In this document: piece after piece, positions 11,399-63,649 of the stretch
Numbering within the stretch: the first letter of the stretch is position 1
How the letters are laid out: each line of letters starts with the position of its first letter
Origin: Haliotis rufescens
Lineage: Eukaryota
NCBI RefSeq assembly: GCF_023055435.1
Contig: NW_025964361.1
Span: forward strand, 58,714,001 to 58,778,000
Direction: 5' to 3'
DNA: 64,000 nucleotides
Made by a program: the position numbers and the translations under genes
The notes under the pieces: model-generated
The model's input: the letters and a program-made list of their open reading frames with translations, nothing else
Database searches by the model: none
What the model was told of the DNA's origin: nothing

Positions 11399-12415
11399 CT
11401 ATGTATGTATGTATGTATGTATGTATGTATGTATGTATGTGCGTAAGTGCGTGCGTGCGTGCGTGCGTGCGAGCGTGCGTGCGTGGGTGGGTGGTTGGGT
11501 GGGTGCGTGCGTGCGTGCGGGTGGGTAGGTGGGTGTGGGTGTGTGTGTGTGGTGTGGGTGTGGGTGTGGGTGTGGATGGGTGGATGGGTGGATGGATGTA
11601 AAATGTGCTGCAGTATATGGACACATGTCATTTACGACACGGTGCAGTATATGGAAACCTGTCATGGACAACATGGTGCAGTATATGGACACCGGCCATG
11701 TACAACATGGTGCAGTGTATGGACACCTGTCTTGTACACCATGGCGCAGTATATGGACACCTGTCATGTACAACATGGTGCAGTATATGGACACCTGTCG
11801 TGGACAACATGGTGCAGTATATGGACACCTGTCGTGTACAACATGGTGCAGTATATGGACACCGGCCATGTACAACATGGTGCAGTATATGGACACCGGC
11901 CATGTACAACACGGTGCAGTATATGGACACCTGTCGTGTACAACATGGCGCAGTATATGGACACCTGTCTTGTACAACATGGTGCAGTATAAGGACACCT
12001 GTCGTGTACAATATGGTGCAGTATATGGACACCTGCCATGGACAACATGGTGCAGTATATGGACACCTGTCTTGTACAACATGGTGCAGTATATGGACAC
12101 CTGTCATTTACATCATGGTGCAGTATATGGACACCTGCCATGTACAACATGGTGCAGTATATGGACACCTGCCATGTACAACATGGTGCAGTATATGGAC
12201 ACCGGTCATGTACAACATGGCGCAGTATATGGACACCTGTCATGTACAACATGGTGCAGTATATGGACACCTGTCATGTACAACATGGTGCAGTATATGG
12301 ACACCTGTCGTGTACAACATGGTGCAGTATATGGATACCTGTCATGTACAACATGGTGCAGTATATGGACACCGGCCATGTACAACATGGTGCAGTATAT
12401 GGACACCTGTCGTGT
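11399..12415. repeat. Compound microsatellite (11399-11600) plus 34-bp minisatellite (about 24 copies, acaacatggtgcagtatatggacacctgtc(a/g)tgt)
   Basis: Contiguous head-to-tail units in intron 2 of gene B. Confidence 0.95.
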
Positions 12416-41433: not shown

Positions 41434-44400
41434 TTAAGGAATGGTTTCGTAGACATGGCTGTCACTGACGGATGCTGGGTACTCTGATGCAGGGTGACGG
41501 GTCTCCTTCACCGACTGCGGGTCGACGTGAGCAGGTGAGGCTCTTCTGGATTTAGGGACATAAGCTGGCCCTGTGGGTGAGGTGGAGACCATTTGTGATG
41601 GTGGCGTGTACGGTGGCGCAGTCGGTGAAGATGATACAACTTTTGTTGGCGGCGAGTAGGGTGGGGGAGGATAAGCTGTTCCTGCTGGTTGGGGGACTCG
41701 TGGGTGCGGCTGAGATGCGAGATCGTAGCCTGGATTAAAGGCACGGTTTGCTGTACCTGGATCAAAAGGAATATATGTGTAGATCAAAACAGCGTCTATG
41801 TTAGCATATATTAGTATCTCTATACTGTGAAGCAGAATTCAGATAGAAATAAAATTCAGTTATNNNNNNNNNNNNNNNNNNNNNNNNNNNNNNNNNNNNN
41901 NNNNNNNNNNNNNNNNNNNNNNNNNNNNNNNNNNNNNNNNNNNNNNNNNNNNNNNNNNNNNNNNNNNNNNNNNNNNNNNNNNNNNNNNNNNNNNNNNNNN
42001 NNNACATCAGAGCATTTAATCAGGCACGTTTTGCACGTGCATTGGTTCTGTAATACCCTCAGGCGTGCCTTGACGCAGTCCAGTTCTGTTCAGGAACACT
42101 CTTACAGTGGAAAGAGTATAATATTACCCTGGGTCAAGTTCCAAACAACAAAAACTAATCGCCATGATCTTAGTTTAATATGGACTTCCAACAGTCGTAG
42201 CTCTTTGGTAAAAATGTAAACACACACAAGACGTATTTACATCTAACCATGGTTAGGAATGTGTTTAAATCCTAGACGAAATAACCATTTGGTGTGTTCT
42301 GTCTTAACACGTTTAGGGTCTAAACACATGAAAAGAACTATCGTTATAGCAGCCTAAACACCACCTAATCACAACATCCCCATAATCTAAACACGTTATA
42401 AATTACCTACGATGAATTTCAAGGGGGGTCTTCTAGTCTTTCCAATAATTACACACTAAACACGTTTAGCTGTTTAACACAGCCCTTATCATGTTTAGGA
42501 TCTAAACACTTTGTTTAAGTGTATAGATCGCCATGGCTCCAGGGCCTCGTTCCACAAAGCGATCTCAGCGCAACGACGATGGTTAGCCAATGTTAAAGTA
42601 TGCGATCACCTTAGCGCTGAGACCCCTCTAAATACCAGTTACAAAGCGTAGGTGTACGATATAATTTGTGAAAAGACCGTGCAGTCTAGACAGGAAAAGT
42701 TGTGTCAGGTTTCCATTCATATACGGATCCATATTACTCACTAATCAAGTTAAGTCTTTCAGAGCAATATTCGTCGGGTACAGAAACACTGGACAAGAAC
42801 ACCTTAATGGGAGACATCACCGAAATCAATGTTGTATGTATGTTGCAAAACGATCTTTCTGTTACAAATGAAAAAGAAATGGTTTTGAAAATGACGAAGG
42901 GAGAACTATTGTGATCGAGTGTTGCGTCACATGACTACGGCAGCAGGGTACGCCAAGGCTGCTGCTGGTCTAAGAGTCAAATGAAGCCATACGAAATGTC
43001 TCCCTCTCATTGTTGTACCGAAAGACCTAATATACATGCAGGAATTAAAGGCGTCTTAAATTACACATGATGCTTTCTAAGAAATAACCTCATGTGAACA
43101 ACACGTTTCACGGTAAACCAAAGGATAAAGCGCACTTTGAATGCATGGACAATACTTGTATTTCACATTTACCTACCCAAAAGCCTACATGAATTTTCAC
43201 GAAGTCACAAATAGACACATTTGTGCGGACACTTGATGTCGTCGCCTGACGTCAAGTGCGGTAGTTTCATTTATTCAAACGCCCATCCACAGTGCTCCCG
43301 ATATGTCATGACTAGTTCCCAAGAACTAAGCCATCATTAAGTACAGTGTTTACCTGCAGGTTTGATGTGCCGTTGGTGTTCTTGTCCCGCTTGACCTGGT
43401 TCTCTTCTAGAAGACTTCCCGCAGCACCCGCAGCACAGAGCGATGCCGACAATGATGGAGATGAAGGCGACAGCCCCTACTGCGATCCCTGCAACCGCGC
43501 CCGTGGACAAACCAGAGCTACACGTACAGGAAACAAGCTCTTGTCAGACACAGTGACGAGATGTACTCTGTAGGTAACGTTTAAGGACTTGACATACAAT
43601 GTCTAGCCTTAAACATCACCTTCATGTAACGAAATATTCAAACAAGAATGCAAAGGGGAGTATTATACTTCTTAAATACATTGGTACACTGTTTAAAGAC
43701 CTGTTGCTGCAAGGGGCGCAATATCCTACTCTTCACCCAGACGCTCTCTCGTGGAGAGTTTTGGAACAGCTGAGTGAGTGAGTTTGTTTTACGCCGCTTT
43801 TAGCAATGGTCTAGCAATATCACGGCACCAGAAATGGGTTTCACACATTGTACCCATGTCAGGTATCGAACCCGGGTCCTCGGCGTGAAGCGCGAACGCT
43901 TTAACAACTGTGCTATCCGACCGCCCTTGGATAAGCTGTGCAACGTATTCAATGTGCCCTTTATCTTCAAATCCCTCCGATTCGGATAGTCTATCAGTTA
44001 TATATCATCCCTTCACCTCAGCCTGACATGCCAATTGGCTCAATTACTCATAATACCCTCATATCATTTATGTCCACCTTGGGACACTGGTAAAACCCCA
44101 GTTGTCTAAGGCACCGCAAGTCGTGTCCAGACTTGCGTCACCATAAGCGTGTCAGAATCCTATGGTCGTGGGTTCCATTCCATCATTTCCTTGGACATAA
44201 GTATTGCTTTTTCAGTAGTGTGGGTTTCAGCAAGGAGGTTGCAGCAATCACAAGGAGGTTTTTCCCGCATTGACACAGTGAATACTGTTCAAAGTGGCGT
44301 TAGACCACTCACTCTCTGTTGGAAAAAGATAGTGACCTCATCCTGTCCTTTCTTACATTATTATAAAAATAATTGGCTAATGCCTTCATGATACGCCAGT

Positions 44401-47310
44401 CCCAAAGTAGAATATCATGGTCAATGCTTCTCTGAGGCACTGACACCACAGTGAAAACAGGTTCGTTGCTTTAATTCTAGGTCTTCTTATCCACCTGGAA
44501 ACTGGATAATTGTTCATGCGTCATGGTCGGCTATGACATTAACCCCGTAGACGTCAGCCAGTGCAGTCACGATTTATAGTTGCCTAATATTGTCATGTTT
44601 CTCAGTCAACACCCTCCCAAACATCAATGTGTCAAGTCATCTCATAATGACGTGTTTTAATACCAGTCATGTTTGTAATTGTCAGTTAGTTTCTACGGTG
44701 ATTCTCGACCGAGAGAGTCAGGGAAAGAGTGAATGTTGTTTTACGCCGATGTCGCATTACAATTATTTCATGGCAGATGTTAATGCAATGTCGCCCAGAC
44801 AAACGTCCGTTGATAAGGACCGTTGTATGAACTGCTTTTTCAAGGGTGTGATGACACACCGCCATCTTTGGAACCATCTGATTCGACAAGCATGGAGTTC
44901 TTGAGAATTTTTTGTTTGTTGTTTAACTCACCTCGTGGGGCAACAATGCTTCGAGTCTGGGCTTCCACAGCAACGGTCAGGACATGTCAGTTTCTTCTCT
45001 GACCCATAATTGTCTCTCCTCCCAGGGACAACATCAGTCGTTTTCTCGCGCTTGTAGCATTCTTCATACCCATATACTGAATAACATAAACCGCACATGT
45101 ACTCAATGATATAAATCATACATCTTGATACACAGCACATGTACTCAATGATATCAATCACACGTCTTGATACATATCACATGTACTCAATGATATCAAT
45201 CACACGTCTTGATACATAGCACATGTACTCAATGATATCAATCACACGTCTTGATACACAGCACATGTACTCAATGATATCAATCACACGTCTTGATACA
45301 TAGCACATGTACTCAATGATATCAATCACACGTCTTGATACACAGCACATGTACTCAATGATATCAATCACACGTCTTGATACACAGCACATGTACTCAA
45401 TGATATCAATCACACGTCTTGATACATATCACATGTACTCAATGATATCAATCACACGTCTTGATACATAGCACATGTACTCAATGATATCAATCACACG
45501 TCTTGATACACAGCACATGTACTCAATTATATCAATCACACGTCTTGATACATAGCACATGTACTCAATGATATCAATCACACGTCTTGATACACAGCAC
45601 ATGTACTCAATGATATCAATCACACGTCTTCATACACATATACTGAACCAGATACACCACACATATACTCAATGATGTTAATCATACGTATTCAGATTCA
45701 AAGTTGGAATGTCTTCTTTAATCATTTGTCATTTTTGTAAAAAACGACTTTTCATCATTTGAATGTAATACTTGATGGGAGACTACGGATGATACGGTGC
45801 CAGTGTCATCTTACTCATAAAGAAGGTGAGGTGAAATGGGGTTTAACGTCGTCTAAGACTATTGCACTTATATAGCGACGTGTGTGTGGTTGTGTGGCTG
45901 CTTGTACTAGTCCGGACTGATGCCGATTTATAGTGCTAGCTCACTGGGATACCATGCCGCAGTTTAACATGAATACCCCACTCAGACACAGTATACTGAC
46001 TCCGAGCCGACTAGTCCTTGTTTTAGCCCCTTAATGCCGAGCGCCAGACAGGGAAACAACAAGCACCATCTTTTAACGTTTCTGACGCGACCGGGGATCG
46101 AACCCCGGACCTTCCGCTCTCCGGGCGGACGCTCTACCACTAGACCACGGAGGCGGTCACTCTTAAAGAAGAGTTTCGAAAGAACGAATTTGGAAACCTC
46201 GGCTATAAATCTTGTTTCTTGCTCCTTTATTGGGCGGAATTTCAAGAACGAACAGCTTTACAGGGAAAGTCGGATAAGGGATGCAGCATGGCTGGCTGTA
46301 CCTACTTTTGCTGTATGAAAATAGTGATTGTCTACCTGTGTAATGTCTTGTGCAGTAAGTGATATAAAACGTTTTGTTTGTTTGCTTGTTTAACGCTAGG
46401 TTAACATACAATTCCCGAAATAATGTATTGCATAACGTTAACAAATATAATTCGGTAAAGGAGCAACCGAATACCACGGAATCCGCATAGAGCCAAAAAT
46501 GGGACGTTGGAGCTAGAACTGAAAAGTGGAGGAGTGAGTGAGTGAGAGAGTTTTCAGCCATATTCCAGCAATATCACGACGGGGGACACCAGAAATGGGC
46601 TTCACACATTGTACCCATGTCGGGAATCGAACCCGGGTCTTCGGCGTGTCGAGCGAACGCTTTAACCACTAGGCTACCCGACCGCCCCGAAAAGTGGAGG
46701 AACCCCCGCCATGCGCTAAATGAGAGATACATGGTAGTGAATGTTTTAACAAGAATAAGCCCTTGGGTATGTAAGAGAGACGAGTTTAAAGCCGCACTTA
46801 GCAATATAAGGGTGGCCTGTAAATCATCGAGTACAATAAACCAGTGATTTGTATTGTGGGCAACGATTCAAAACGTCGGAGTACGATACAATCATCCTTG
46901 TGTCAAGCTCTGACGACCAGATCCAACAGCATCTCTTACGACAAACACAGGTTGCGCAGAGGACGATTCTAAGCAGGAATCCCACAGGCATAAAGATATA
47001 ATATAGTCGGGAAATCAGTTACTAACTTATTACTGACCAATATTGTGTGAAGTATTTCACTGAACTGAACAGTGAACATCCTTTTTCTGTGATTAGTTTT
47101 TCCTTACTACATTGCGTTGCATATTCATTTACCGCAGATAACAACGTGACTGTGAGCGAGTGAGTGAGTGAGTGATTGTAAGAGGCAAGGAAACAATGCA
47201 TACATCAAACACATGACATTTGATAAATATTGATATGTGATATTTGAGGCATGCTACTCACAAACTGTGGTCAAGAGAGAGAGAATGAGAGCAGTCTTCA
47301 GGGAGACCAT
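41434..47310 (-). CDS. Gene E: CYYR1/Shisa-like single-pass membrane protein, 4 exons (47262-47310, 44932-45076, 43354-43517, 41434-41756), 226 aa
   Basis: 681-bp open CDS, phases 1/2/1. Signal MVSLKTALILSLLTTVLYG; ectodomain EECYKR...LTCPDRCCGSPDSKHCC; TM GLSTGAVAGIAVGAVAFISIIVGIALCCGCC, resembling the CYYR1 TM; PPPY tail ending SHVYETIP*. A small gap lies in intron 3. Confidence 0.88.
45092..45690. repeat. 42-bp minisatellite, about 14 copies (gcacatgtactcaatgatatcaatcacacgtcttgatacaca)
   Basis: Head-to-tail units abutting the gene E exon 2 acceptor. Confidence 0.95.
45824..46158 (-). mobile_element. SINE family 3, full length
   Basis: Same sequence family; lies in intron 1 of gene E. Confidence 0.85.
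46534..46688 (-). mobile_element. SINE family 1, full length, 13-bp TSD
   Basis: TSD gaaaagtggagga on both sides. Further copies at about 43771-43926 (-) and 63449-63612 (+). Confidence 0.9.
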
Positions 47311-49890: not shown

Positions 49891-50495
49891 TCTCCACGGT
49901 TGCCTAAATGCAATATTTGTGATCAGATTCTGAAAACGTCGTCAACAACGTGATGAACGTCTAAGGGATATTGCTTCAAACTGGTCGAACTCAGCGAGAG
50001 ACAATATCCTCAATGTATCTCAGTTTCTGATTTGCATACTTTCCGACAGGTTTCTGCAGAAACAAAATGTAAATGATGGGCCCCGCACACGACACCCAGG
50101 TAAAGTAGGGAATATCGAACACAACAGATGATTATGGAAATACAACGAGGTATAGAGTGACAGTTATGGAAGGATAAGAAAGGGGAAGCCTTGTGTAATG
50201 TCCAAATGTTTCAACTCATTGTTCTGAACTTTGCCTCCCCATCTCACCCACCAAAGGCCACTTTGATATTAAACGTTGGACTTCAAAGAAGAAGCTGCTG
50301 GCTCTATTATAAGCTGAGTTTATATAACTGCATATGGGATTAAAACTGCAGGTTGGTTGATCAAGGGACTCATACAATTTTGTGAAAGTGTCATAGGTCA
50401 TTCCAGCTACTTCAATGCGTTTTGCTTATATACAGGAAATGCTCGGCTTGCTTATTTGGCTGTCTATTCCTTTGCTGAAAGACCCGTGAAGATTC

Positions 50496-53400
50496 GGTGT
50501 CTAGCCGGTTGAGCCACATTTCTAAAAATGACTTTTGCCGAATGCGCCACATTTTCAGCTGTGTGCATTTCACCTACTCTAGCCGGTAATTAGTTAATCA
50601 GATTACCGATACCTTTAAATGAGTGTCTCACATTTAAATTGAGTAGACTCACCTCAATTAGCTTGTAGAGATTACTAAGCGTGGTGTTCTTTAGAGATCA
50701 ATGGCGGTCTTAATTGACATTGAGTTAATCCTGTTATTCATAACGTATTTAATTGACGTCCTGTTCACTTCATGTCAAACTACAGGAATAGTATTTAAAC
50801 ACAAAAACATGAAACCCGCCTCCCTAAAACTCCAGATAAACAACAAACCAATCCAATTCCTAAAACAAACCAAATTCTTAGGACTAATTTTCGATGAACA
50901 TCTTTCCTGGGACGCTCACATAAATAATCTAATAACTAAATGTAGCAAAGATCTAAATGCGCTAAGATGCCTCACTGGCTCAAACTGGGGGGCCTCGAAA
51001 GACACCCTCCTCTCACTCTATATATCACTAATTAGATCTAAAATAGACTACGGATGTGCCATGTACGACACCCTAAACCAATCCCTAAGCAAAAAACTAG
51101 ACTCAATCCAATATCAGGCTCTAAAACTAATAACACGCACTCAACATGGCACCTCCTACACTTCACTCCAGGCCTTAACAGGAGAAATGCCACTAAGTCT
51201 ACGTAGTGAACAATTAACCCTAAATTTCTGGGCCGCGTCTCAATCCAACCCCCTAATTCAAAGCCTAATAAACAAAAATATAAGCCCCAAAAACCAAGCC
51301 CTAGCTCGAAAACACCCTCTACTTACTCCAATATCCCAAAGAATAACCAATTACTTACATGAACACCAAATAAACAATCTTAAAACAAAACTGTAAAAAA
51401 TCAAATATCTTCACCCCAAAACTTAAAACACCCAAAATAGACATAACACTAGCTAGCACAATAAATAAACAAACCGACCCAAACATAGCTCAAACCACCA
51501 CACTAGCATACATACTTGAAAATTGGCCAAATTGGTGTCACATTTACACAGACGGATCCTCAGATCCGATCTCCAAACACACAGGTTTCGGAGTCCACAT
51601 CACACAACCTACTAAAGCCACACAATCCTACCGACTCCCAAACAATCAATCAATATTCACTGCCGAACTAATGGGCATGGCCTCAGCCCTTTATAATCAA
51701 CAATCTAAAAAACAACAAAAAATCCTAATACTTACCGACTCGCTCAGTGGACTACAAGCCCTCTAAAATAAAAACACCAAAAACCGCCCTGAACTAATAA
51801 ATCAGATACTAAAGAGCTCAAACGATTTAACTAACGCAGGCAAACAAATAGTATTCATTTGGATCCCCGCCCACGTAGGAATATACGGCAATGAAAACGC
51901 CGATAAAGCAGCTAAACTATCCCTTAAAATCCCAGAAATAAGCTTAAACCTACCCATCTCCAAATCAGAAATTAAAAGTGTTACCAAACAAAAAATCACC
52001 AAAAAATGGCATAACCTATATCAAAACTCAAATAGCCAAATCAAAAAGGTTCTCAAAAAAAACCTAACCAAACCAAAAATTTTACATCCGTCCAAAAAAA
52101 TCGACAGAGTAATTACTAAACTCCAAACAGGACATACCAACCTAAATAACCACCACAAAATAATAAGAAAACACGCAACATGAACCTGCCCACATTGCAA
52201 ACAACAAGAAACCCCAGAACACGCACTCATACACTGCACCCACTACCTAACACACCGAACTACACTACAAACCACCCTAAATCTAAATAAGGCTCTTACT
52301 CTAGAAGCAATCCTAAACCCACAAAATAAAATAGAAAAATTCAAAGCCTTAGGCTTCAAAATTTCCAAAATTCTATATAAGCAACCACTAAAACACCCCT
52401 ACTGGATTGCCAAACAACTTATTCCCCTTTTCGGAAACACATTAAATGGCTTGGCCGGGCCCGTGTGCGAAATACGCTGCAGTCGGAAAGCGCACGTAAA
52501 ATCTCCAATATAAGTAAGTAAGTAAGTAAGCACTTTATGTCAGAACCATGGCAAATGCACAAGTTCAAATAAAGTTCATTGAAAGTGGCAGAGGAGGCGT
52601 CATTTTGTACTATGATGGCTTTAAGTTACGGTGTAAGAACAGTCGTGGTGAAAGAAGATACTGGTCCTGTATTGTCAAGGAGTGCACTGCAAGGATCACA
52701 ACTCAGGGTGAGTTGCTCCACGCCACCTCGTGACAAGGTGGATGATGTGTGGCTTGATGCCATTGCTGACTCTCCTGCTGGCCCTAAAGTGACTGCCTCC
52801 ATGGACAATGTGACAACCAGTTGGGTTCAAGGACAGGCCTTCATCCCAGAGATTTGGAATCACTTCGAAAACCAAGGCAACCGTACCAACAATCACCTAG
52901 AAGGGTGGCACAACAAGATAAAGAGACTTGTCAAGAAGTGCCACCGGAACATCTACGAGGTAGTGAAGCTCTTTCAGCGCGAGCAGTCACTCACAGAGGT
53001 TGCAGTCCTGAGACTCTCTCACCAGTGGTCAGAACCTTCACGAAGAAGGAAGTACAAAGCAACCGATGCTCGTATTGCATCCCTCAAGACCCAGCCACTG
53101 AACCAACACCTGAGTGAGATGAAATATGCTGACCACGTGGGCGACCTCCTTCATCTGCAGCAATGACATTATGGTAGTGTTCGGCATCATCAAGCCATGC
53201 AGTAGCGTAATACATCTGTGTCTTACATATAAGTGCAAACATTGTCATTGTTTTGGATGTGCTACACAACAATTCATTACACAATCATGACCCGTAATGT
53301 GACAATGTAATATGACCTGTCATGATATCCATCAATGTGATGTTTTGATGAATATATTATCCCTGTTATGATCTAAAAATGAGAAAACAAGACTTGTTTT

Positions 53401-53555
53401 GTTAAATACGGTAACCTGTTAGAATCACAAAGCATGTTTTGACAGCATAGCCACGAGAGCCACATTCCACAATCATGGAACCGTAACCATTGCCCCGCGA
53501 GCCACATCAATTTTGGCTATCTATTTTCGAAATGTGGCTAAGGCGGCCTGTAACC
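50496..53555 (+). mobile_element. Mutator-like (MULE) DNA transposon, internally deleted, interrupted by a LINE
   Basis: 8-bp TSD gaagattc (50488-50495 and 53556-53563). Imperfect TIRs with GG..CC ends sharing agccacatttc. FLYWCH-like start at 52548 (YDGFKL..YWSC..CTARI) and transposase C-terminus WNHF..RTNNHLEGWHNKIK. The DDE core is missing. Confidence 0.85.
50778..52530 (+). mobile_element. 5'-truncated RNase H-containing LINE (I/Nimb-group-like), defective
   Basis: RT thumb region KFLGLIFDEHLSW..IRSKIDYG; RNase H motifs YTDGS, TAEL, TDSLS, WIPAHVGIYGNENADKAAK; CCHC finger CPHC..ETPEHALIHC; (TAAG)n tail 52511-52530. TSD cacttcatgtca / cactttatgtca (50766-50777, 52531-52542). Internal stops. 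Confidence 0.9.
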
Positions 53556-53787
53556 GAAGATTCCGGGGTAGAATAGGTCTTCAGCAACCCATGCTTGCCG
53601 TAAAAGGTGTCAGACTCGCTGACTTTGTTGATTCATGTCATCAATCCCAATTGCGTGGATCGATGCTCATGACATTAATCACCGGATTGTCTGGTCCAGA
53701 CTCGATTATTTACAGACCGCCGTCATATAGCTGGAATATTGCTGAGTGCGGCGTTAAACAACAAACAAACCAACCAACTAACCAACC
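53556..53787 (+). mobile_element. SINE family 4, 3' part; its head is displaced to 50481-50495 by the MULE
   Basis: Removing the MULE rejoins gacccgtgaagattc with cggggtagaataggtcttcagcaacccatgcttgcc. Confidence 0.85.
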
Positions 53788-54309
53788 TTAGCTGAAAAAT
53801 GCAGATCCAAATTGTCATTAAGCCAGATTCATCAATATATTAAGTACTGCTGACGACGATATCGTGTGGTCCAAAGGTCCAAAGCTTTCTTACATATGTG
53901 CCCCCTGATTTTGCTATAAGATTAATGATCTTTTATCTAGTCTAACCTCCTTGTTATCTTTTGCTATGGCTTCACGTTTTTAAAGTTCAAACTTGGCGTG
54001 CTACTGGTGAGGTGCTAAATGGGTCTTCTGCTGATTCGTTGGTTAGTTTGTTATAATCAATAGGCCATAATCTCGTGAAGATCACGTGTAATATTTTCAT
54101 CAATGTTCACCACCTCTGTGGGAACGAAGGATTTTCTATCATTACCTATACCTATCCCATTCATTGTGGTTCTTTTTGATTCCCCTAATGGTGAAGTTGA
54201 GTGGGTGTGGATTAGGCTTGTCTCCCTGAACAAGATGAATTTCCCTGAAGAGTGTGTGTTCAGTCAATGATTATAGGTTTCTTGCAAACCTGAGGTTAGG
54301 TCTACTAAT

Positions 54310-54700: not shown

Positions 54701-56618
54701 TTCTGAGGAGGACTGGACACTCCTCTTGAGTTCCTAACTGCTGCATGACACAAGTCCTCCTATAGAACGAGACTCTTCTATGTCTGAAACATTCACATGA
54801 ACAAAACAATGAGTAATAATTGTGACGAGCAGGACTATATCCCTTTAGTTCAAGGTTAAAGGTAGTAATTGAGAATACCACTGGTACATAAATGTGTTTA
54901 TTTAGCACTGTATAGGCATGTCCCACTTTTGGCATTAGTTGACTCCACCCACTTAAAACACTCTGCACAGCAGATTGCGGCGCCTTAGGCCAATGGGCCA
55001 CCACACAGTTGGACCACTCTGGCAAATCAACTTCAAGGAGATAAGAAAGTAAGACACAATATATGTTTTTCATTGAATGCTATAGTTCTTTATTGCTTCA
55101 GAGCAAAGTGTTCAAGTTATGCAGACTACAAATTTGTCACTTCTAACCATTACTGGTGTTATCTTTAGACTTTGCGTTATGTCATGGGGTCTAAAGGGTA
55201 TTATCCTATTGTGAATGATAAGAAAACTTGAGAAATTCTCTTTTCTTATACTGAAATTTGCTTGGTTTTGTATTTGAAATTAAATATTGAACTATGGATA
55301 TACTTCTGTCAGTGACCCTGTTTTACATGTAGTTGTGCACAACATTGACTCAGTCCTCTTGTCATAGGCACGGTGGTATGTGTTAAACCAACTCTCGTTT
55401 ATCAAACAGGATTGTTCCTGCTAGCTGATAACAATACATATGTCCTATCCGGGTCTCAAGGGGAACTACTTGATTTACTGATATATAGGTCATGTCGGGT
55501 CAAAATGTTGTTATGTAATGATAGTCTTAAGCGGGTCACCCGTCTCACTAGCGTGTGGACATGACTTGAAATTACCTGCAGTTTGCAATGACCGGGAGCC
55601 ATTGTGAACATACCTTGTTTCGTTGGAGTATGTGTGCTGTTGTCTGGACGTCTAGTCTCAGGTAGGTGTAACATATATTCGTTGTAACATATGCATATCT
55701 GGTTTCAAATACATCTCGCGTTATTTTTATTCGAGCTCACACTTGATTAGAACGACCAATGAGATTGGGTGAAAGTTAGGGGAATACAGTGAATTATTCA
55801 TCACACAATGATGTCAGGTGAGTTTGTATTAAGTCAGTGTACAACTGTAGCGAATACTGCATTGTGAGTTATTAGGTGGCCATGGACATTTGAAGAATCC
55901 AGCATCACTTTATAAACTATTTCAGTAAGGAGAAGCATGACATCAGAATAGTTAATAATTGATATGATCAGAATATCAGATATTGGTTGGATAGATCAGG
56001 ACGGCCAAATTGTCAAAATTTGTCCCTTTTCCGTGCTTTGTTGACACCGATACGTGTGACATGTGCCATCCAGCTTTGACCTTATGTTTACCAAGTCTCG
56101 CTTTCAAATTTGAATGTTTGGGTGTCTATTCATCATCACAGATAGATGCAATCAACCAGACTCATTATTCGGACAATCATCCGATTCAAGGTCAATGCAT
56201 TTTCACGTTCATGTACAGATCATCTAATCCCCAGATTACAATCTGATTACATTATCAAGCTTGTCTGTGCATTAATGCTTACCCCTTTAACTGAAAGGCC
56301 TTTTTCACTTGTATACTTCAGAATGTGAGGTGAGATACCATTGACAGACAATAGCCTTTGCTTCTTGCCTAGGTAGACAACAATTCTCAAGTGAAAAGTC
56401 CGTGCACTCTCCCGAAACCTGAGACAGAAAGCAGGGATATACAGGTGATCAATGGTCACAGTCTAACAATAGAAAGGTGCACATCAAAAGAACACAAACG
56501 TCAAAGCCGGAACAGATCCCACGCAAAAGTCAAAATGCCAGCGATGGAACACTGAAAATCAGCGTTGACACCAGTTGCTCACGAAAAGGACTGACATTTG
56601 TTCCTACTAGAACTGCTG

Positions 56619-56650
<32 letters not shown>

Positions 56651-57020
56651 GACACCACTTAGGTGCACGAATCATTCACAAGAACACTGACTGCTGGTAG
56701 AAAGGATATTTCAGACTCCAAAACAAAAGGTAGGAAGAAAAAATATCCGCCTCAAAGAATTCATTCCATAGGACTGTCACATATTTTCACCTGCATTTCA
56801 TCGTCCATACCTCGTCAATGTAGTCATATGTCCAAAATCTTATTTATTATTCTTTTTCTACTGACCTAATATTGACATCAATACCCCTTGTCTGAGCAAT
56901 GTCCCCTTTTTGGCCGATAATGTTCATTGAATTCTGAATTTCAATTCCTTTAGATGTACCTAAACCAATGTATTTATTATTACAGATAAATTCTACAAAT
57001 ATTCTTGGGAAACACTGAAA

Positions 57021-60000
57021 ATGAGTTCATCAGATCAGGTACCGGATTGCAACAAGAAATTTCTCTTGCCATGGGTGAAAATATCAAAGCTGGTGACAAA
57101 GCATAAGCAGCATATGACGCCCGAAGAGATAATAAATGACATTCTAAAAAAAAGTTCTAAGTTGCATCAGAAGACCATTCTTCGTCAAATTGTTGACAGC
57201 ATGGAGGAGTTTCATGTGCAGCTGTATTACTCTAAAAGACAGTCTAAAGTAAAATGTAAATTTGATTCTTTTGTTGCTGAAGAAGAAAGAAGTAGGCAAA
57301 CTGTCAATATGAGAATTGACGCGTTGTTGTTTTTCTACAGAAATGTTGGACATGAGCCAGAGATTTATGCACTTACCACTGGCTGTGCTTTGAAATTACT
57401 GAAGGGTCATATCGACTGTGGTTTCCCTAAATATATTGGCCGGCGAATACTAGGTTTCCATCTAAAGGTATTGTCATCAAAACATTTATTTGGGGACAAA
57501 ATTTCATCTTATGCAAACTACTGGCAGACTGAGTCCGAAACATTCCTGTCATTTTGGGACTGTCTTGGTGACATCACAAACAAGTATCAGATGCCTGTCA
57601 AGAAACAGTCGTCAGTATACACACTTCTTACTGGAAATAAGGAACGTGTTGTAAACGTGGAGATCAGTGAAGACAGTATAACATTTCACAAACGTCTTAG
57701 TTGGTTAGATATTTCTGAGCTGTTGACGAAAATGTCTGCAATACTGGATGGATTTGTGACTGATGCAGCAATGGACAAAGATGACCCTCGTTTTGATGTG
57801 TTTGACCACGTAAAACGTGTTAACACGAAAGCTGAAATGAAGAAATATGATGACAAACTGAAAACACTTCTGGCTAAATCATTAAAACTGTTATGTAATC
57901 CATTGCGTCTGAGACTAATGTACAAAGATGTTGAAAGTTGGGTATCGGCAGACGAGTTTCTCCTAGTGATGCCAAGGGCAGCTGGAACATTCATACAAAA
58001 ATGGGAAGGAAGCCCTCCTACATTGGAATCAGTTCTCGGGGCTTGCAGGCGTTATGCCAAGGAAAAGAAAATCCATGATGCTGCCCTGGGAAGATTAGTG
58101 AATGACGTGTCTATTCAGTTTGCGTGTACAGATACAGGTACATACATCATCAGAGGAAAGGCAAAGCTGACAGATCTGATAGAAGGACACTTGCACACTG
58201 ACACGGGCATATCAGTATTCAGATACTGTGGCAAATGGTTTCGTATACACGTTGAATATTTGACACAAGTTGAAGAGCTATTTTCTAAAGTGATGGGAAT
58301 TTGTAATTTAGAACAGGACAAACTTCCATTACCATGGCTATATTCTAGCTCTGATAGCAAAGTGGCAAATGTAGACACCAATGATATCAAATACTGGATC
58401 ACACAACTGAACTTTAGTGAGTGTTGCAACCCCATCGAGGACAAGGCTGATTTTAACGATTTTCTTTTGAATGAAACAAATGTCGTTAAAGTCGAGAAGC
58501 AGCTGATGGCACGATTATTTTCTAAACAAAGAGAAAGGGAATACAACAGTGGATACATACTTTACAACAAGATACCCTCAAAAAGAACTAATGGTGAATC
58601 AGGATTTTTGCTTGGAGACAACATTTTGATGAAGAATATAGAGCTGTTTGATCTACTTTACTACACACCAGAATGTACATATCTGATCCATGTCAAAAAT
58701 GGTTTTGGAAATTCATTCAGGGATGTTTGCTCTCAAATAAGAATATCAGCTGACTTTTTGCACTGTTGTCTCAATGCAACTAACAGGTTCAATTTTCTTA
58801 AAGAATTCTGGAAAATTGCTGCCAACAGAGGGAAAACAACCTACAGAGAGGCTGTAAGACAAATGTATCGAGAGGTGGGATGGTACAGATTTGAACAAAT
58901 GTTCCACAGGAAGATTTGCTTTGTTTTGGCATACAGAGACATTAAAAAATCGTCACAAAGACGAACATTCTCCAGCGCATCATCCAAGAAGCTGACCAAA
59001 CACTGTGGAGAAGACACAGACAGACTATTGAGGAATTTGGCACTTAAGGACTTTCTGGAGGAAAGACAAGGTACATATTATCTCACAGATAAGATTTTCA
59101 AGTTGAAGGCTGATATAGTGAAGGACATCATTAATGTGACCACACGTGTTGCCAAAAAAGTGGCAAGTATTTTGAAAGAAAGAGTTTCCAAGTCATTCAT
59201 TTCTAAAATGGAGTTTGTTCAGTTATACAGCTATTTCAGAAAATATTCAATAGGAAATGGTTTTTCTTTAAGGATTTGCAGAATACAAAACCATACCATT
59301 TCACATTTTTCATTACCCAAATCTTCTGCATCTCCAGTGTCTGATTGGTCAAATACTGGCTTGAGCGAGCATGATGACAGACTGCACACTTATGAGTTTC
59401 ATCACCAGGGGTCTGATCACACAGGGCTTGGTCAACAACAATCTCATGATCTGCAGCCTCATAGACCAAGGTCTGATAGTCAGGGATTGACAAGCTCAGG
59501 GTCACTTACATCAGGTAGTAGTGACCACCATCATCATACAGAGACGTCTGATCAACAGAAATCTGATAGTGAGAGGCTGACTAACTCAGGGTCACTGGCC
59601 TCACATAGTGGTGACCACCGACATCATTGTGAGAAGTCTGACACACGAAAATCTGACACAAGGAAGTCTGATAAACGGAAATCTGTTCGCGAGAGGCTGT
59701 CAAGCTCAGGGTTACTTGCCTCGTGTAGTGGTGACCACCATCATCATAGTGAGAAGCCTGACACAAGGAAGTCTGATAAATGGAAATCTGATAGCGAGAG
59801 GCTGACAAGCTCAGGGTTACTTGCCTCATGTAGTGGTGACCACCATCATCATAGTGAAAAGTCTGACACAAGGAAGTCTGATAAACGGAAATCTGATAGC
59901 GAGAGGCTGACTAACTCAGGGTTACTTGCCTCGTGTAGTGGTGACCACCATCATCATAGTGAGAAGCCTGACACAAGGAAGTCTGATAAACGGAAATCTG

Positions 60001-61547
60001 ATAGCGAGAGGCTGACAAGCTCAGGGTTACTTGCCTCATGTAGTGGTGACCACCATCATCATAGTGAAAAGTCTGACACAAGGAAGTCTGATAAACGGAA
60101 ATCTGATAGCGAGAGGCTGACTAACTCAGGGTCACTTGCATCACGTAGTGATCAGCTTCATCATAATGAGAGGTTTGACACACAAAAGTCTCACACAAGG
60201 AAGTCTGATAAATGGAAATCTGATAGCGAGAGGCTGACTAACTCAGGGTTACTTGCCTCATGTAGTGGTGACCACCATCATCATAGTGAGAAGCCTGACA
60301 CAAGGAAGTCTGATAAACGGAAATCTGATAGCGAGAGGCTGACAAGCTCAGGGTCACTTGCCTCACATAGTGGTGATAAGCATCATCACAGTAAGAGGTC
60401 TGACACACGAACATCCGACACAAGGAAGTCTGATAAATGGAAATCTGATAGCGAGAGGTCGATCAGCTCAGAGGTACTTGCATCACGTAGTGATCAGCTC
60501 CATCATAATGAGAGGTTTGACACACAAAAGTCTGACACAAGGAAGTCTGATCAACAGAAATCTGATAGCGAGAGGCTGACTAACTCAGGGTTACTTGCCT
60601 CATGTAGTGGTGACCACCATCATCATAGTGAGAAGCCTGACACAAGGAAGTCTGATAAACGGAAATCTGATAGCGAGAGGCTGACAAGCTCAGGGTTACT
60701 TGCCTCATGTAGTGGTGACCACCATCATCATAGAAAAAAGTCTGACACAAGGAAGTCTGATAAACGGAAATCTGATAGCGAGAGGCTGACTAACTCAGGG
60801 TTACTTGCCTCATGTAGTGGTGACCACCATCATCATAGTGAGAAGCCTGACACAAGGAAGCCTGATAAACGGAAATCTGATAGCGAGAGGCTGACAAGCT
60901 CAGGGTTACTTGCCTCATGTAGTGGTGACCACCATCATCATAGAAAAAAGTCTGACACAAGGAAGTCTGATAAACGGAAATCTGATAGCGAGAGGCTGAC
61001 TAACTCAGGGTCACTTGCATCACGTAGTGATCAGCTTCATCATAATGAGAGGTTTTACACCAAAAAGTCTGACACAAGGAAGTCTGATAAACGGAAATCT
61101 GATAGCGAGAGGCTGACAAGCTCAGGATCACTTGCATCACGTAGTGATCAGCTCCATCATAATGAGAGGTCTGACACACAAAAGTCTGACACAAGGAAGT
61201 CTGATAAACGAAAATCTGATAGCGAGAGGCTGACAAGCTCAGGGTTACCTGCCTCACGTAGTGGTGATCAGAATCATCATAGAGAGGCGTCTGGCACACA
61301 GAAGTCAGAGATGAAAAGGTCGACTCAGCAGGCTCGTAAGCGGAAATCTGATAGACACTGGAAAAATGATTCGAGGCCATTTCAGCACCTCACGCATGGC
61401 TGGCAACCAGACGGACAGCTGTATGGTAGTTGGGAATCTGACGGACTTGATCAACCTTCTTGGGTTTGGACTAATGTGCACAATGGGCAACAAACTCCTG
61501 AATGGCAACAGGAAGGACAACCACATCTTAAACGCCGTAAAGTGTAG
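57021..61547 (+). CDS. 1508-aa protein: N-terminal TIGR04141/DUF6119-like domain with putative PD-(D/E)XK-type nuclease site, His/Ser/Lys-rich tandem repeats, C-terminal NLS
   Basis: Uninterrupted 4.5-kb ORF. Collinear motifs recalled for bacterial TIGR04141/DUF6119 proteins: LLFF..IYALTTG..IDCGF, ITFHKRLSW, FRYCGKWF, LPW, EREYN, LGDNIL..IELFDLL..YLIHVKNGFGNSFRDVCSQIRISA, FVLAY, SKSFISK. Ends LKRRKV*. The frame is open upstream to an AG at 56984-56985, so the true start may lie in an upstream exon. The family call is motif recognition, not a database hit. Confidence 0.85.
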   Translation: MSSSDQVPDCNKKFLLPWVKISKLVTKHKQHMTPEEIINDILKKSSKLHQKTILRQIVDSMEEFHVQLYYSKRQSKVKCKFDSFVAEEERSRQTVNMRIDALLFFYRNVGHEPEIYALTTGCALKLLKGHIDCGFPKYIGRRILGFHLKVLSSKHLFGDKISSYANYWQTESETFLSFWDCLGDITNKYQMPVKKQSSVYTLLTGNKERVVNVEISEDSITFHKRLSWLDISELLTKMSAILDGFVTDAAMDKDDPRFDVFDHVKRVNTKAEMKKYDDKLKTLLAKSLKLLCNPLRLRLMYKDVESWVSADEFLLVMPRAAGTFIQKWEGSPPTLESVLGACRRYAKEKKIHDAALGRLVNDVSIQFACTDTGTYIIRGKAKLTDLIEGHLHTDTGISVFRYCGKWFRIHVEYLTQVEELFSKVMGICNLEQDKLPLPWLYSSSDSKVANVDTNDIKYWITQLNFSECCNPIEDKADFNDFLLNETNVVKVEKQLMARLFSKQREREYNSGYILYNKIPSKRTNGESGFLLGDNILMKNIELFDLLYYTPECTYLIHVKNGFGNSFRDVCSQIRISADFLHCCLNATNRFNFLKEFWKIAANRGKTTYREAVRQMYREVGWYRFEQMFHRKICFVLAYRDIKKSSQRRTFSSASSKKLTKHCGEDTDRLLRNLALKDFLEERQGTYYLTDKIFKLKADIVKDIINVTTRVAKKVASILKERVSKSFISKMEFVQLYSYFRKYSIGNGFSLRICRIQNHTISHFSLPKSSASPVSDWSNTGLSEHDDRLHTYEFHHQGSDHTGLGQQQSHDLQPHRPRSDSQGLTSSGSLTSGSSDHHHHTETSDQQKSDSERLTNSGSLASHSGDHRHHCEKSDTRKSDTRKSDKRKSVRERLSSSGLLASCSGDHHHHSEKPDTRKSDKWKSDSERLTSSGLLASCSGDHHHHSEKSDTRKSDKRKSDSERLTNSGLLASCSGDHHHHSEKPDTRKSDKRKSDSERLTSSGLLASCSGDHHHHSEKSDTRKSDKRKSDSERLTNSGSLASRSDQLHHNERFDTQKSHTRKSDKWKSDSERLTNSGLLASCSGDHHHHSEKPDTRKSDKRKSDSERLTSSGSLASHSGDKHHHSKRSDTRTSDTRKSDKWKSDSERSISSEVLASRSDQLHHNERFDTQKSDTRKSDQQKSDSERLTNSGLLASCSGDHHHHSEKPDTRKSDKRKSDSERLTSSGLLASCSGDHHHHRKKSDTRKSDKRKSDSERLTNSGLLASCSGDHHHHSEKPDTRKPDKRKSDSERLTSSGLLASCSGDHHHHRKKSDTRKSDKRKSDSERLTNSGSLASRSDQLHHNERFYTKKSDTRKSDKRKSDSERLTSSGSLASRSDQLHHNERSDTQKSDTRKSDKRKSDSERLTSSGLPASRSGDQNHHREASGTQKSEMKRSTQQARKRKSDRHWKNDSRPFQHLTHGWQPDGQLYGSWESDGLDQPSWVWTNVHNGQQTPEWQQEGQPHLKRRKV
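59470..61300 (+). repeat. Coding tandem repeat, about 17 units of 105-120 bp (SEKxDTRKSDKRKSDSERLTxSGLLASCSGDHHHH)
   Basis: Directly visible. Each unit contains 15-bp sub-repeats (aagtctgacacaagg/aagtctgataaacgg). All length variants preserve the frame. Confidence 0.95.
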
Positions 61548-63649
61548 CACAACTATGGACGAAGTAGAGACAGACATCATGACCGAAGGTGGCGTGATAG
61601 GAGCGTGCATGAACTGTTCAGACATGCTTAAATGTATTATGTTGCCTTCTTCGAAGTAACAATATGAAATTTGGTTAACACAGCTTTGAACAGTTGCCAT
61701 GTATTTATGATCATGTTCTCCTGCTGGGTTCCATGCAGGTAGCAAAAGTACTGTAAGTCCCTATGGTCCCCAGTGAGGTGATCTATCTTCAGTTGCTGGC
61801 GATCTATAGCCTTTTTTTATATTGTATCGTTAGGTATAGTGACATCTTTTTATGGTTGTATACTAGTTTTAAATAATATTCTGTGATCATCTAGGTATTT
61901 TACTGTCCTTTGTTGACAGGCCGTTATTGTTTAAATGTATATATTATGTATAACTTTTGGTAGTCACGATATGGCTGAAATACTGCCGATGTGACTATAA
62001 ATTTTAACTCACTCACTCACTCACTATGATCATGTTCAATAAGTGTATGTATTAATTATTCAAGTGGTAGGTGTTGAAAGCAGAAGAAACGAAACTAACA
62101 GCACTCAAACGACTGTCAAATTGTTGTGAGATATATCTGATTTCTCACACAATGACAGTGTGGAGCTGGGTGTAAAGATGCTTTCTAAGTTATGTTTTTC
62201 AAATTTTGGTAACAATTGTTTTCTTCAATCAAAAAAGTCAAGTAGTAGATACAAGTTCTTCAGGCTTTGTTCTACATGAAAAGTAATTAAAGTAGGTTAT
62301 TTTCATTGTCATTCAACATGTGCGTGCCAAGGTTCCTTGTCAAGAGAAGAACGATGTAAAATATAAATTGCTCGACTATCATTGTGGATGTAATCAAGTT
62401 AATAGTGTTACTATTACATTATTGATAAGTGATATTGTTTTTTGCAATTTAAATAATAGTTTATTGAACAAGAACGATGGACAAGTAAAACAATGAATTT
62501 GTTGCTTGTGTTTCAGTATTCTTTCAAAATAATCTCTATGATTACACCTGAGGCTAAGAGGATACTCTGGTTATAAAGCATATATAACTTTCAGTGTTTC
62601 TCTATATAACCCTTTTTAGTTGAACTATAAGGTGACACAAACCTTTGCTTTCAAATCTAATCTGTGAAATACTAGATGGCAAGATTCCATTTGGACCATT
62701 ACTGGAAACAGTTGACATCCTTCCCAACTTTTAAATGCGTTTTAATCACATCTTATCAAAGCTAAAAATTGTTTTAAATATGCCATGAAAAATGTGTATG
62801 TGTATGAAAAACATACACAAAATTAATTATGTCTATATTCGCAGCCTTCAATTTTTTGGTGATTTTGTTTTCATCCAATATAATTTTAAGCATATTTTAA
62901 ATGACTTGTTATCAAATATATAGTTTAGTCAACTTGACATCATCAATGTGAGCTTTTGTCATGCGTCATCCATCCTTTAGAACTGAAACTTTATAGTCTC
63001 CTTCTCCAAATGTACTGAACATATCAATATCGGTTTCACGTAACATGTTTTTAATGTACCTAGCTACAACGAAGTATTCTTTTCATTTTGAAAGATTTTA
63101 AATGGCCACAGCAAAAGCTCATTTTAATCCAAAAAATAAAATGTGTGGTCATGGCGCTTCTCGAAATGGTGTCTCTTTTATCAGTTGAATAACTAATTTT
63201 GTTTGCTATATGCTTACTAACACTCCTAATAATAATAAAGTGACAAAACCCTTTCCATATCCCAAAGAAATCTCTGCATAAAGCTGAGTCGATAGTACAA
63301 GAAAAACCCTATGTATTGTAATTTTTCTCTGGAATAAGAAAGGAGGTCTTTGAAGATCAAAGTCATAATGGATAAAGCACTTATAGGACCATTGGCTTAA
63401 CGATACGCTTGAAATGAGTTTGTTGGGGTATGTTTCACCATTTCAGGCTGGGGCGGTGAGGTAGCCTTGTGGTAAAAGCATTCGCTAGTCATGTCGAAGG
63501 CCCATGTTCGATTCCCCACATGGGTACAATGTGTGAAGCCCTTTTCTGGTGTTCTCAACCATGATATTGCTGGAATATTTCTAAAAGCGGCATAAAACCA
63601 TACTAACTCACGCATTACAGGCTGGGCTTTCTAGGGCTTGTGATATTGA

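What the first reader, a model, noticed from the sequence alone, without database searches (positions are those of the whole stretch)
57021..59288. Bacterial mobilome protein family (TIGR04141/DUF6119-like nuclease) encoded as an intact gene in an animal genome
Seen: a stop-free 755-aa globular region with E505-x-x-YN, E541-x-x-D544, H557-V-K559 and Q572, embedded among animal SINEs. Established: TIGR04141/DUF6119 is a sporadically distributed bacterial family of unknown function that co-occurs with integrases, restriction enzymes and phage genes. From memory, its motifs (YA.T.G..ID..FG, DGKWY, E..YN, IE.CD, HVK.GF...RDL..Q..SA, FV.A, S.IAK) run in the same order along this whole region. Inference: D..HxK..Q is a variant PD-(D/E)XK (Mrr-like) active site that has been kept intact. 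This would be a horizontally acquired or patchily retained prokaryotic defence-type nuclease repurposed in an invertebrate, possibly for antiviral or anti-transposon defence. I know of no description of animal members.
Basis: partly seen in the sequence, partly recalled or inferred. Interest (0 to 1): 0.92.

Follow-up and report, generated by a model that had tools for sequence, protein, structure and literature searches.

The report
Chlamydia-related nuclease gene family in molluscs
An intact abalone gene encodes a predicted nuclear DNA-cutting protein from an otherwise bacterial family (DUF6119), its closest non-mollusc relatives are in Chlamydiae (intracellular bacteria), which suggests an old bacterium-animal gene transfer that nobody has described.

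Summary
The ORF is twice as long as reported: 57021-61547, 1508 aa.

Its parts are:
- a globular part, aa 1-756;
- about 17 Ser/His/Lys-rich 35-40-aa repeats;
- a C-terminal KRRKV.

DUF6119 membership is confirmed by Pfam (37.5 bits, cut-off 27, tail removed) and by profile-profile comparison with the ~600-aa forms (probability 100%, E 1.5e-62, end to end). TIGR04141's own cut-off is not reached.

AlphaFold models (pLDDT 87 and 92) give an RdgC-like N-terminal half and a C-terminal domain whose best structural neighbours are PD-(D/E)XK nucleases (Z up to 7.5, modest). E505, D533, E541, D544, K559 and Q572 are near-invariant across 150 relatives.

What is new: this is a mollusc gene family, named in abalones, scallop and clams, with five stop-free loci in this genome. 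Its sister clade holds Chlamydiae (Simkania and a 'Chlamydiae bacterium'). Both clades share two inserts that the short forms lack. In the chlamydial-type clade, 35 of 80 members add a USP deubiquitinase.

Expression, nuclease activity, any defence role and the transfer direction remain untested. The scan has no other follow-up of this family.

The parts
57021..61547 (+). Complete single-exon coding sequence, 1508 aa plus stop. The same start context (MSSS...LLPW.KIS.L) is used by the H. rubra relative P0001.
   Evidence: An identical 1508-aa protein is already a called gene in the public collection (P0003).
57066..58310 (+). N-terminal half (aa ~16-430): RdgC-like predicted fold, with the conserved IYAxTxG...D..FP...R motif (aa 113-142).
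   Evidence: Model pLDDT 87. Phage RdgC: Foldseek E 2.5e-4, prob 1.00. E. coli RdgC 2owl: prob 0.98 and VIA Z 6.1 over 202 residues.
58338..58508 (+). Insert 1 (aa 440-496), present in the mollusc and chlamydial-type long forms and absent from the ~600-aa forms.
58509..59288 (+). C-terminal PD-(D/E)XK-like domain (aa 497-756).
   Evidence: Domain model pLDDT 91.6. VIA wide search: the top nine hits are all PD-(D/E)XK nucleases, Z 5.8-7.5.
58533..58736 (+). Candidate active-site stretch: E505 (start of helix 505-515), D533, E541, D544 (start of strand 545-548), H557-V-K559 (strand 552-560), R567 and Q572 (helix 564-585).
58953..59192 (+). Insert 2 (aa 645-724): a helical module resembling HhH/SAM domains. 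It is ~80 aa in both the mollusc and chlamydial-type forms and ~10 aa in the short forms.
   Evidence: (AlkA, EndoIII, DisA and SAM hits, Z ~5)
59472..61334 (+). Tandem-repeat tail (aa 818-1438): about 17 units of 35-40 aa (105-nt unit with 210/315-nt higher order); Ser 21%, His 10%, Lys 10%, Asp 10%.
   Evidence: Only this frame is open across the array.
61335..61544 (+). Non-repeat C-terminal end with basic clusters RKRK (aa 1439-1442) and KRRKV (aa 1504-1508), which look like nuclear localisation signals.
   Evidence: That these are NLSs is an inference from resemblance to monopartite signals.
56971..56985 (+). Candidate splice acceptor (T-rich tract ending in cag) 35 nt upstream of the ATG. 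It would imply a 5'-UTR intron.
   Evidence: Read directly from the sequence. Not tested with RNA data.
61719..62025 (.). High-copy SINE-like host repeat just downstream of the stop codon.
   Evidence: 10,482 first-look candidates; copies at 86-98% identity on many contigs
55786..56108 (.). Older interspersed host repeat upstream of the gene (copies at ~68-70% identity).

Best explanation
This is a real, intact abalone chromosomal gene. It encodes a long-form DUF6119 protein: an RdgC-like DNA-binding half followed by a PD-(D/E)XK-fold nuclease domain with a variant D...HxK active site and an HhH/SAM-like insert. A disordered Ser/His/Lys-rich repeat tail follows and ends in nuclear-localisation-like motifs. 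The most likely mechanism is that the protein enters the nucleus, binds DNA through the RdgC-like module and the helical insert, and cleaves it with metal bound by D544, E541 or D533, and K559. The gene belongs to a mollusc-wide paralogue family. That family's sister group is a long form carried by Chlamydiae, so the family most likely entered an early mollusc from a chlamydia-like intracellular bacterium. It was then kept, duplicated and given eukaryotic tails.

Shown here: gene integrity, family membership, predicted folds, residue conservation and the mollusc/Chlamydiae relationship.

Inferred only: nuclease activity, nuclear location, the direction of transfer, and any role in genome defence or conflict.
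For: Integrity and host location: one 1508-aa ORF, 58.7 Mb into a contig of a 1.33-Gb assembly. Host repeats flank it. Its base composition matches its surroundings.

Family: PF19614 at 37.5 bits against a cut-off of 27. hhalign probability 100%, E 1.5e-62, window aa 62-756 against positions 73-610 of 616. In the ESM Atlas, 29 of 30 nearest clusters are DUF6119.

Folds.

Conservation: all 11 named mollusc proteins keep all ten core residues at 26-67% overall identity.

Family in animals: five stop-free loci in this genome. Named relatives come from Haliotis rufescens, H. rubra, H. asinina, Mercenaria, Mizuhopecten, Tegillarca and Mya, on contigs of up to 102 Mb.

Chlamydial link: P0040 is from a 'Chlamydiae bacterium' and P0014 from Simkania sp.. 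On the rooted tree, a clade with all 11 named molluscs (98) is sister to a clade with both named Chlamydiae (95). The two groups share inserts 1 and 2.

Constraint: paralogue dN/dS is 0.27-0.36.

Tails: the H. rubra and H. asinina relatives also have repeat tails and basic C-terminal ends.
Against: No expression data could be obtained.

Structural Z-scores are modest (at most 7.5), and Foldseek against PDB gives nothing below E 0.1 for the nuclease domain.

The canonical acidic residue of (D/E)XK is His here, and H, Q or N in relatives.

Only two members of the sister clade are named. Seven rows near the base of the long-form clade are of unknown origin, so the direction of transfer is open. 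The careful tree with bootstraps did not finish.

The youngest paralogue pair has dN/dS 0.71. No link to any known defence system was found.
Confidence: 0.6

Rival explanations
1. The transfer ran the other way. The long form, with its two inserts, arose in a eukaryote, and Chlamydiae captured it. Chlamydiae often take up host genes, and they then fused it to a USP domain.
For: The tree shows sister clades rather than molluscs nested inside named bacteria. Chlamydiae are known to hold eukaryote-type ubiquitin enzymes (PMC4209131, PMC10643670). The USP fusion is confined to the chlamydial-type clade, 35 of 80 members.
Against: The core family is otherwise bacterial and spans several phyla. The chlamydial-type clade is much the more diverse (80 against 22 representatives). 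Among eukaryotes, only molluscs were found among the named hits.
Confidence: 0.2
2. The domain is no longer a nuclease. The protein is a non-catalytic DNA- or chromatin-binding factor that keeps a restriction-enzyme-like scaffold.
For: His replaces the usual acidic residue of (D/E)XK. The fold matches are only moderate. RdgC itself is a non-enzymatic DNA binder.
Against: E505, D533, E541, D544, K559 and Q572 are near-invariant from the short bacterial forms to molluscs. That pattern is typical of a maintained metal-binding catalytic site. H/Q variants at this position, and acids supplied from elsewhere, occur in real enzymes of this fold (Cfr10I/NgoMIV type and BsoBI, which are among the hits; this point rests on established knowledge).
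Confidence: 0.15
3. The gene is bacterial contamination or a mis-assembly from a chlamydial symbiont of the sequenced animal.
For: Its nearest non-mollusc relatives are chlamydial.
Against: The gene lies deep inside a ~60-Mb contig, with high-copy abalone repeats within 170 bp of the stop codon. It carries a eukaryote-style repeat tail with NLS-like ends, which other abalone species share. Relatives sit on chromosome-scale contigs in seven other mollusc species. It shows only 24-30% identity to chlamydial-type proteins.
Confidence: 0.02
4. The gene is the cargo, or a domesticated remnant, of a eukaryotic transposon or virus and is not a host gene under selection.
For: The coding sequence is intronless, and the genome holds several copies, including a tandem cluster. 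Nucleases and Ulp1/USP-type proteases are common in mobile elements (general knowledge).
Against: There are only five loci, at 24-43% identity to this one. No terminal inverted or direct repeats bracket the gene. The window holds no transposase, integrase or capsid ORFs. PHROGs and the phage and plasmid records gave no hit.
Confidence: 0.05

Closest known systems
Bacterial DUF6119 (PF19614) / TIGR04141 'sporadically distributed protein', ~600 aa, function unknown
   Same: Collinear over the whole length (hhalign 100%, E 1.5e-62). It has the same motif string and the same near-invariant E, D, E..D, (H/Q)xK, R and Q residues.
   Different: The window protein has two inserts (~57 and ~80 aa), a 750-aa repeat tail and NLS-like ends. 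It scores below the TIGR04141 cut-off. It is encoded in an animal chromosome.
Long-form DUF6119 proteins of Chlamydiae (for example the Simkania sp. MAG protein P0014 and the 'Chlamydiae bacterium' protein P0040), often fused to a USP deubiquitinase
   Same: They share inserts 1 and 2 and form the sister clade on the tree. The core residues are the same.
   Different: Of 80 members of that clade, 35 carry a C-terminal USP domain, against none of 22 in the mollusc clade. They have no Ser/His/Lys repeat tail. Identity is 24-30%.
RdgC, the recombination-associated DNA-binding protein of E. coli and phages
   Same: The predicted fold of aa ~16-430 resembles it.
   Different: There is no sequence-level match to the RdgC family. 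RdgC has no nuclease domain. A ring-dimer arrangement was not tested here.
PD-(D/E)XK nucleases: type IIS cleavage domains (FokI, BspD6I), NucS, and Cfr10I/Bse634I/NgoMIV
   Same: The helix-strand-strand-strand-helix-strand core order is the same, with an Asp at the start of strand 2 and x-K on strand 3.
   Different: His (Gln in some relatives) replaces the first acidic residue of (D/E)XK. A helical HhH/SAM-like module is inserted after strand 4. Z is only 5.8-7.5, and no sequence similarity is detectable.

Membership tests
Pfam DUF6119 (PF19614) | Score above the curated gathering threshold (27 bits) | tested here: met
   37.5 bits, E 1.5e-9, for aa 1-756. The whole 1508-aa protein gives no hit because of the repeat tail. 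Paralogue P0004 scores 67.6 bits.
Pfam DUF6119 (PF19614) | Collinear, full-length homology to bona fide members | tested here: met
   hhalign probability 100%, E 1.5e-62, 528 aligned columns. The Ca. Doudnabacteria member L008 scores 77 bits on the same model.
Pfam DUF6119 (PF19614) | Conserved motif string (IYAxTxG..D..F, WY/WF, ExxYN, IELxD, HVKxGFG..RD..SQ, SxIxK) | tested here: met
NCBIfam TIGR04141 (subfamily model) | Score above the curated cut-off (35 bits) | tested here: not met
   19.8 bits on aa 1-460, and no hit on aa 1-756. It should therefore be filed under DUF6119, not under TIGR04141 proper.
PD-(D/E)XK nuclease superfamily | Core alpha-beta-beta-beta-alpha-beta fold | tested here: met
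   Domain model pLDDT 91.6 with that element order. The top nine hits, and about 35 of 50 VIA hits, have this fold, Z 5.8-7.5. Caveat: Z is below 8, and Foldseek PDB E-values are 0.15 or worse.
PD-(D/E)XK nuclease superfamily | Catalytic D ... (D/E)-x-K on strands 2 and 3 | tested here: inconclusive
   D544 and K559 are invariant at the expected places. The (D/E) position is H557, and H, Q or N in relatives. E541, D533 and E505 are conserved candidates for the missing acid. No residue-level superposition was available.
PD-(D/E)XK nuclease superfamily | Metal-dependent nucleic-acid cleavage | not testable with these tools
   Needs biochemistry.
   No Mrr family appears among the Pfam hits even at E up to 10. 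No Mrr entry is among the top structural hits.
RdgC family | Sequence match to RdgC | tested here: not met
   No Pfam hit. Only fold-level resemblance.
Known anti-phage defence systems (PADLOC) and phage families (PHROGs) | Match to any component model | tested here: not met
   No hit for the window protein or for the bacterial-length and chlamydial members tested.

The most novel reading that the evidence does not exclude
An early mollusc acquired a chlamydial host-targeting effector, an RdgC-like DNA binder fused to a restriction-type nuclease. Chlamydiae still deploy it as a DUF6119-USP fusion. Molluscs turned it into a family of nuclear, fast-evolving nucleases with variable disordered tails, used against intracellular bacteria, viruses or transposons. 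This would be an animal immune or genome-defence gene family that derives from a pathogen's own weapon.
Probability: 0.2. Interest if true: 0.85.

Novelty: new variant of a known kind. Interest (0 to 1): 0.62.

Why it matters
DUF6119 is an uncharacterised bacterial family. This work gives it three things.

First, a testable mechanism: an RdgC-like DNA binder joined to a PD-(D/E)XK nuclease.

Second, an animal branch that standard annotation misses. Most mollusc members fall below Pfam thresholds and are labelled 'uncharacterized'.

Third, a specific evolutionary link between molluscs and Chlamydiae, supported both by a tree and by two shared inserts.

If the transfer and the activity are confirmed, this would be a clear, old case of bacterium-to-animal transfer of a nuclease, followed by gene-family expansion. 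It would also draw attention to a large, undescribed class of chlamydial nuclease-deubiquitinase fusion proteins. It bears on how animals acquire immune or genome-defence genes, and abalone and clams are farmed species with serious infectious diseases.

Tried and rejected
- Scanning the whole 1508-aa protein against Pfam gave nothing, and NCBIfam gave only a spurious low-complexity hit. The tail had to be removed.
- TIGR04141 scored below its cut-off.
- PADLOC, PHROGs, and tblastn against the phage and plasmid collections gave no hits, so the 'mobilome/defence' context could not be reproduced. The one bacterial locus examined had uninformative neighbours.
- The word-indexed homologue search with the family profile saturated and added nothing.
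- The search for related loci failed with the 20-sequence alignment and with P0027. It worked only with a tight three-sequence alignment.
- A sequence search of solved structures returned only noise.
- Foldseek against PDB found nothing significant for either the whole model or the domain.
- The careful (bootstrap) tree did not finish in about 700 s. The conclusions rest on two quick trees with different models and row sets.
No orthologue DNA was available, so no dN/dS could be computed for the window gene itself. Comparisons with its paralogues are saturated.
- The contamination and transposon-cargo readings were considered and rejected (see the rival explanations).
- N runs in the window (30122-30918, 34448-34613, 41864-42003) were left untouched.
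Full report
**1. The observation**

The stop-free stretch 57021-59288 is real. It is the first half of a single ORF, 57021..61547 on the + strand, 1508 aa. No other ORF in the window comes close in length. The others of 150-440 aa lie on minisatellite arrays or N runs and have no family match.

The window is G000:C583:58714001-58778000, in a 1.33-Gb, 615-contig assembly. A ~307-bp repeat with more than 10,000 candidate copies (up to 98% identity) lies at 61719-62025, about 170 bp past the stop codon. Older repeats lie upstream at 55578-55698 and 55786-56108. The GC content of the gene (0.39-0.44) matches its surroundings. The gene is therefore chromosomal and not a contaminant.

**2. Anatomy of the protein**

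- Residues 1-756 are globular.
- Residues ~818-1438 are about 17 tandem units of 35-40 aa. The consensus is SDSERLTxSGLLASCSGDHHHHSEKxDTRKSDKRK, from a 105-nt DNA unit with 210/315-nt higher order. The composition is Ser 21%, and Asp, His and Lys about 10% each.
- Only this reading frame is open across the array.
- The protein ends with RKRK (1439-1442) and ...HLKRRKV.
- Thirty-five nucleotides upstream of the ATG is a T-rich tract ending in cag (56971-56985). It looks like a splice acceptor, but this was not tested.
- No inverted or direct repeats bracket the gene.

**3. Family membership**

Scanned whole, the protein matches nothing in Pfam, because the tail interferes. Residues 1-756 alone match PF19614 (DUF6119) at 37.5 bits, above the cut-off of 27. 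The NCBIfam model TIGR04141 reaches only 19.8 bits against a cut-off of 35.

An exhaustive phmmer search found 372 relatives at E <= 1e-3. A profile of eight mollusc proteins aligned to a profile of twenty ~600-aa members with probability 100% and E 1.5e-62. The alignment covers window residues 62-756 against positions 73-610 of 616.

In the ESM Atlas, 29 of the 30 nearest clusters are bacterial DUF6119/TIGR04141. One ~600-aa relative lies in a Candidatus Doudnabacteria genome and scores 77 bits on PF19614. In 201 sampled genomes of that phylum, four exceed the cut-off, and none of 14 well-known control genomes does. The family is therefore sporadic in bacteria.

**4. Predicted structure**

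AlphaFold2, run with a 79-row family alignment, gives mean pLDDT 87 and pTM 0.83 for aa 1-756. Residues 485-756 alone give pLDDT 91.6.

The N-terminal half resembles RdgC:
- phage RdgC in BFVD, E 2.5e-4, probability 1.00, 365 columns;
- E. coli RdgC 2owl, Foldseek probability 0.98;
- VIA Z 6.1 over 202 residues.

For the C-terminal domain alone, the nine best of 48,161 chains are all PD-(D/E)XK nucleases: N.BspD6I Z 7.5, R.BspD6I small subunit 7.4, NucS 7.2, FokI 7.0, EcoT38I 6.8, AF1548, Bse634I, Upx and Cfr10I. About 35 of the 50 listed rows have this fold, including NgoMIV, SduA, HamA, McrC, Can2 and Card1.

These Z-scores are modest. The tool warns that Z below 8 can reflect a common arrangement. 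Foldseek against PDB gives no E-value better than 0.15, although its top rows are also BspD6I and McrC.

The order of secondary-structure elements fits the canonical core:
- helix 505-515, starting at E505;
- strand 528-531, followed by D533;
- strand 545-548, preceded by E541 and D544;
- strand 552-560, carrying H557-V-K559;
- helix 564-585, carrying R567 and Q572;
- strand 631-639.

Residues ~645-724 form a helical insert that matches HhH/SAM-type modules (AlkA, endonuclease III, DisA and SAM domains, Z about 5). Placing D544 as the 'PD' aspartate and H557-x-K559 as '(D/E)xK' is an inference from this layout. No residue-level superposition or coordinates were available.

**5. Conservation**

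Across 150 relatives, W439, E505, D533, E541, D544, K559, R567 and Q572 are at least 90% conserved. In a sample of 50, E541, D544, K559 and Q572 are invariant. Position 557 is H, Q or N. All 11 named mollusc proteins keep all ten core residues, although they share only 26-67% identity overall. This pattern is expected of a maintained catalytic site.

**6. A mollusc gene family**

This genome has five stop-free loci: this one, a tandem cluster of three on C390, and one on C68.

Named relatives are RefSeq or GenBank 'uncharacterized' proteins of Haliotis rufescens, H. rubra, H. asinina, Mercenaria mercenaria, Mizuhopecten yessoensis, Tegillarca granosa and Mya arenaria. They sit on contigs of up to 102 Mb. 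Scanned whole, most of them miss the Pfam threshold, which explains their annotation.

The two closest relatives, from H. rubra and H. asinina at 63-67% identity, group with the window gene at 100% support. They also have Ser/His/Lys-rich repeat tails with basic C-terminal ends, but with different unit sequences and copy numbers. The C390 paralogues have no tail. The C68 paralogue has its repeat array inside insert 1.

Paralogue dN/dS is 0.27-0.36 for the older pairs (dS above 1.2, near saturation) and 0.71 for the youngest pair (dS 0.29).

**7. The chlamydial connection**

This was the unexpected result. Many relatives are 900-1650 aa, and a Pfam scan of 50 found a USP/UCH domain in nine and Ulp1 in one. 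I first took these for eukaryotic proteins. However, one USP-fusion member (P0040) is named as a protein of a 'Chlamydiae bacterium' MAG. Its relatives lie on 2.4-2.6-Mb contigs. Another long form (P0014) is from a Simkania sp. MAG.

Two quick maximum-likelihood trees agree: LG+G4 on 129 rows and LG+C20 PMSF on 67 rows.
- The ~600-aa forms separate from all long forms (100 and 96 SH-aLRT).
- Within the long forms, a clade holding all 11 named molluscs (98) is sister to a clade holding both named Chlamydiae (95).

Independently of the tree, both groups share the two inserts. Insert 2 has a median length of 80 aa in the chlamydial-type proteins, 86.5 aa in molluscs and 10 aa in the short forms.

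A local HMM search finds USP in 35 of 80 members of the chlamydial-type clade. It finds none among 22 mollusc-clade members, 20 short forms or the 7 other long forms.

Simkania is known to encode active USP-type deubiquitinase effectors, but with a different layout (PMC10643670). Chlamydiae are known for expanded ubiquitin-related gene families (PMC4209131). I found no paper on DUF6119, TIGR04141, this fusion, or the mollusc genes.

**8. Interpretation**

The best reading is an old transfer between a chlamydia-like intracellular bacterium and an early mollusc. Abalone and bivalve sequences interleave in the clade, which implies paralogues older than the gastropod-bivalve split, or repeated transfers. 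Retention, duplication, and the gain of disordered tails and NLS-like ends followed.

I favour the bacterium-to-animal direction because the core family is otherwise bacterial and the chlamydial-type clade is the more diverse. The tree does not settle this, because seven rows near the base are of unknown origin.

The likely mechanism is a nuclear DNA endonuclease. The RdgC-like half and the HhH/SAM-like insert would hold DNA, and the variant PD-(D/E)XK site would cut it. A role in defence or genomic conflict is suggested only by the tandem duplication, the fast-changing tails and the high dN/dS in the youngest pair.

**9. Limits**

- The bootstrap tree did not finish.
- N runs in the window were left as they are.

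Noticed in passing
Proteins P0016-P0130 (relatives, not in the window): There is a large, apparently undescribed class of chlamydial-type proteins that fuse long-form DUF6119 (RdgC-like module plus nuclease fold) to a C-terminal USP deubiquitinase. 35 of 80 representatives of that clade carry the fusion. One relative carries a Ulp1 domain instead.
   Followed up: partly
G000:C390:1653767-1696563 (L002-L005): Three stop-free paralogues (816, 840 and 889 aa, no repeat tail) lie in a ~43-kb tandem cluster. The youngest pair has dN/dS 0.71 at dS 0.29.
   Followed up: partly
G000:C68:16612408-16615059 (L006/L007; protein P0006): This paralogue carries a long KKAEETSKG-type repeat array inside insert 1, not at the C-terminus. 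Low-complexity arrays were therefore gained independently at different sites in the family.
   Followed up: partly
window 11609-12416, 29117-29537, 45086-45638, 10259-10529: Minisatellites (34 nt x 24, 34 nt x 12, 42 nt x 13, 65 nt x 4). The first produces several overlapping spurious ORFs of 160-315 aa on both strands.
   Followed up: yes
window 50001-54000: This stretch has strongly skewed composition (GC skew -0.12 to -0.26, AT skew +0.15 to +0.19). Its two ORFs (50701-51396 and 52579-53166) have no Pfam match. The cause was not examined.
   Followed up: no
window 61719-62025: A young, very high-copy SINE-like element (copies at up to 98% identity on many contigs) ending in a (CTCA)n-like tail is inserted in the probable 3' UTR of the gene.
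   Followed up: partly
L008:5010-7172 (Ca. Doudnabacteria contig): A YcaO cyclodehydratase-nitroreductase fusion gene lies next to the bacterial DUF6119 gene, with a predicted Zn-protease and a trypsin-like peptidase nearby. Nothing here suggests a mobile-element or defence context.
   Followed up: no
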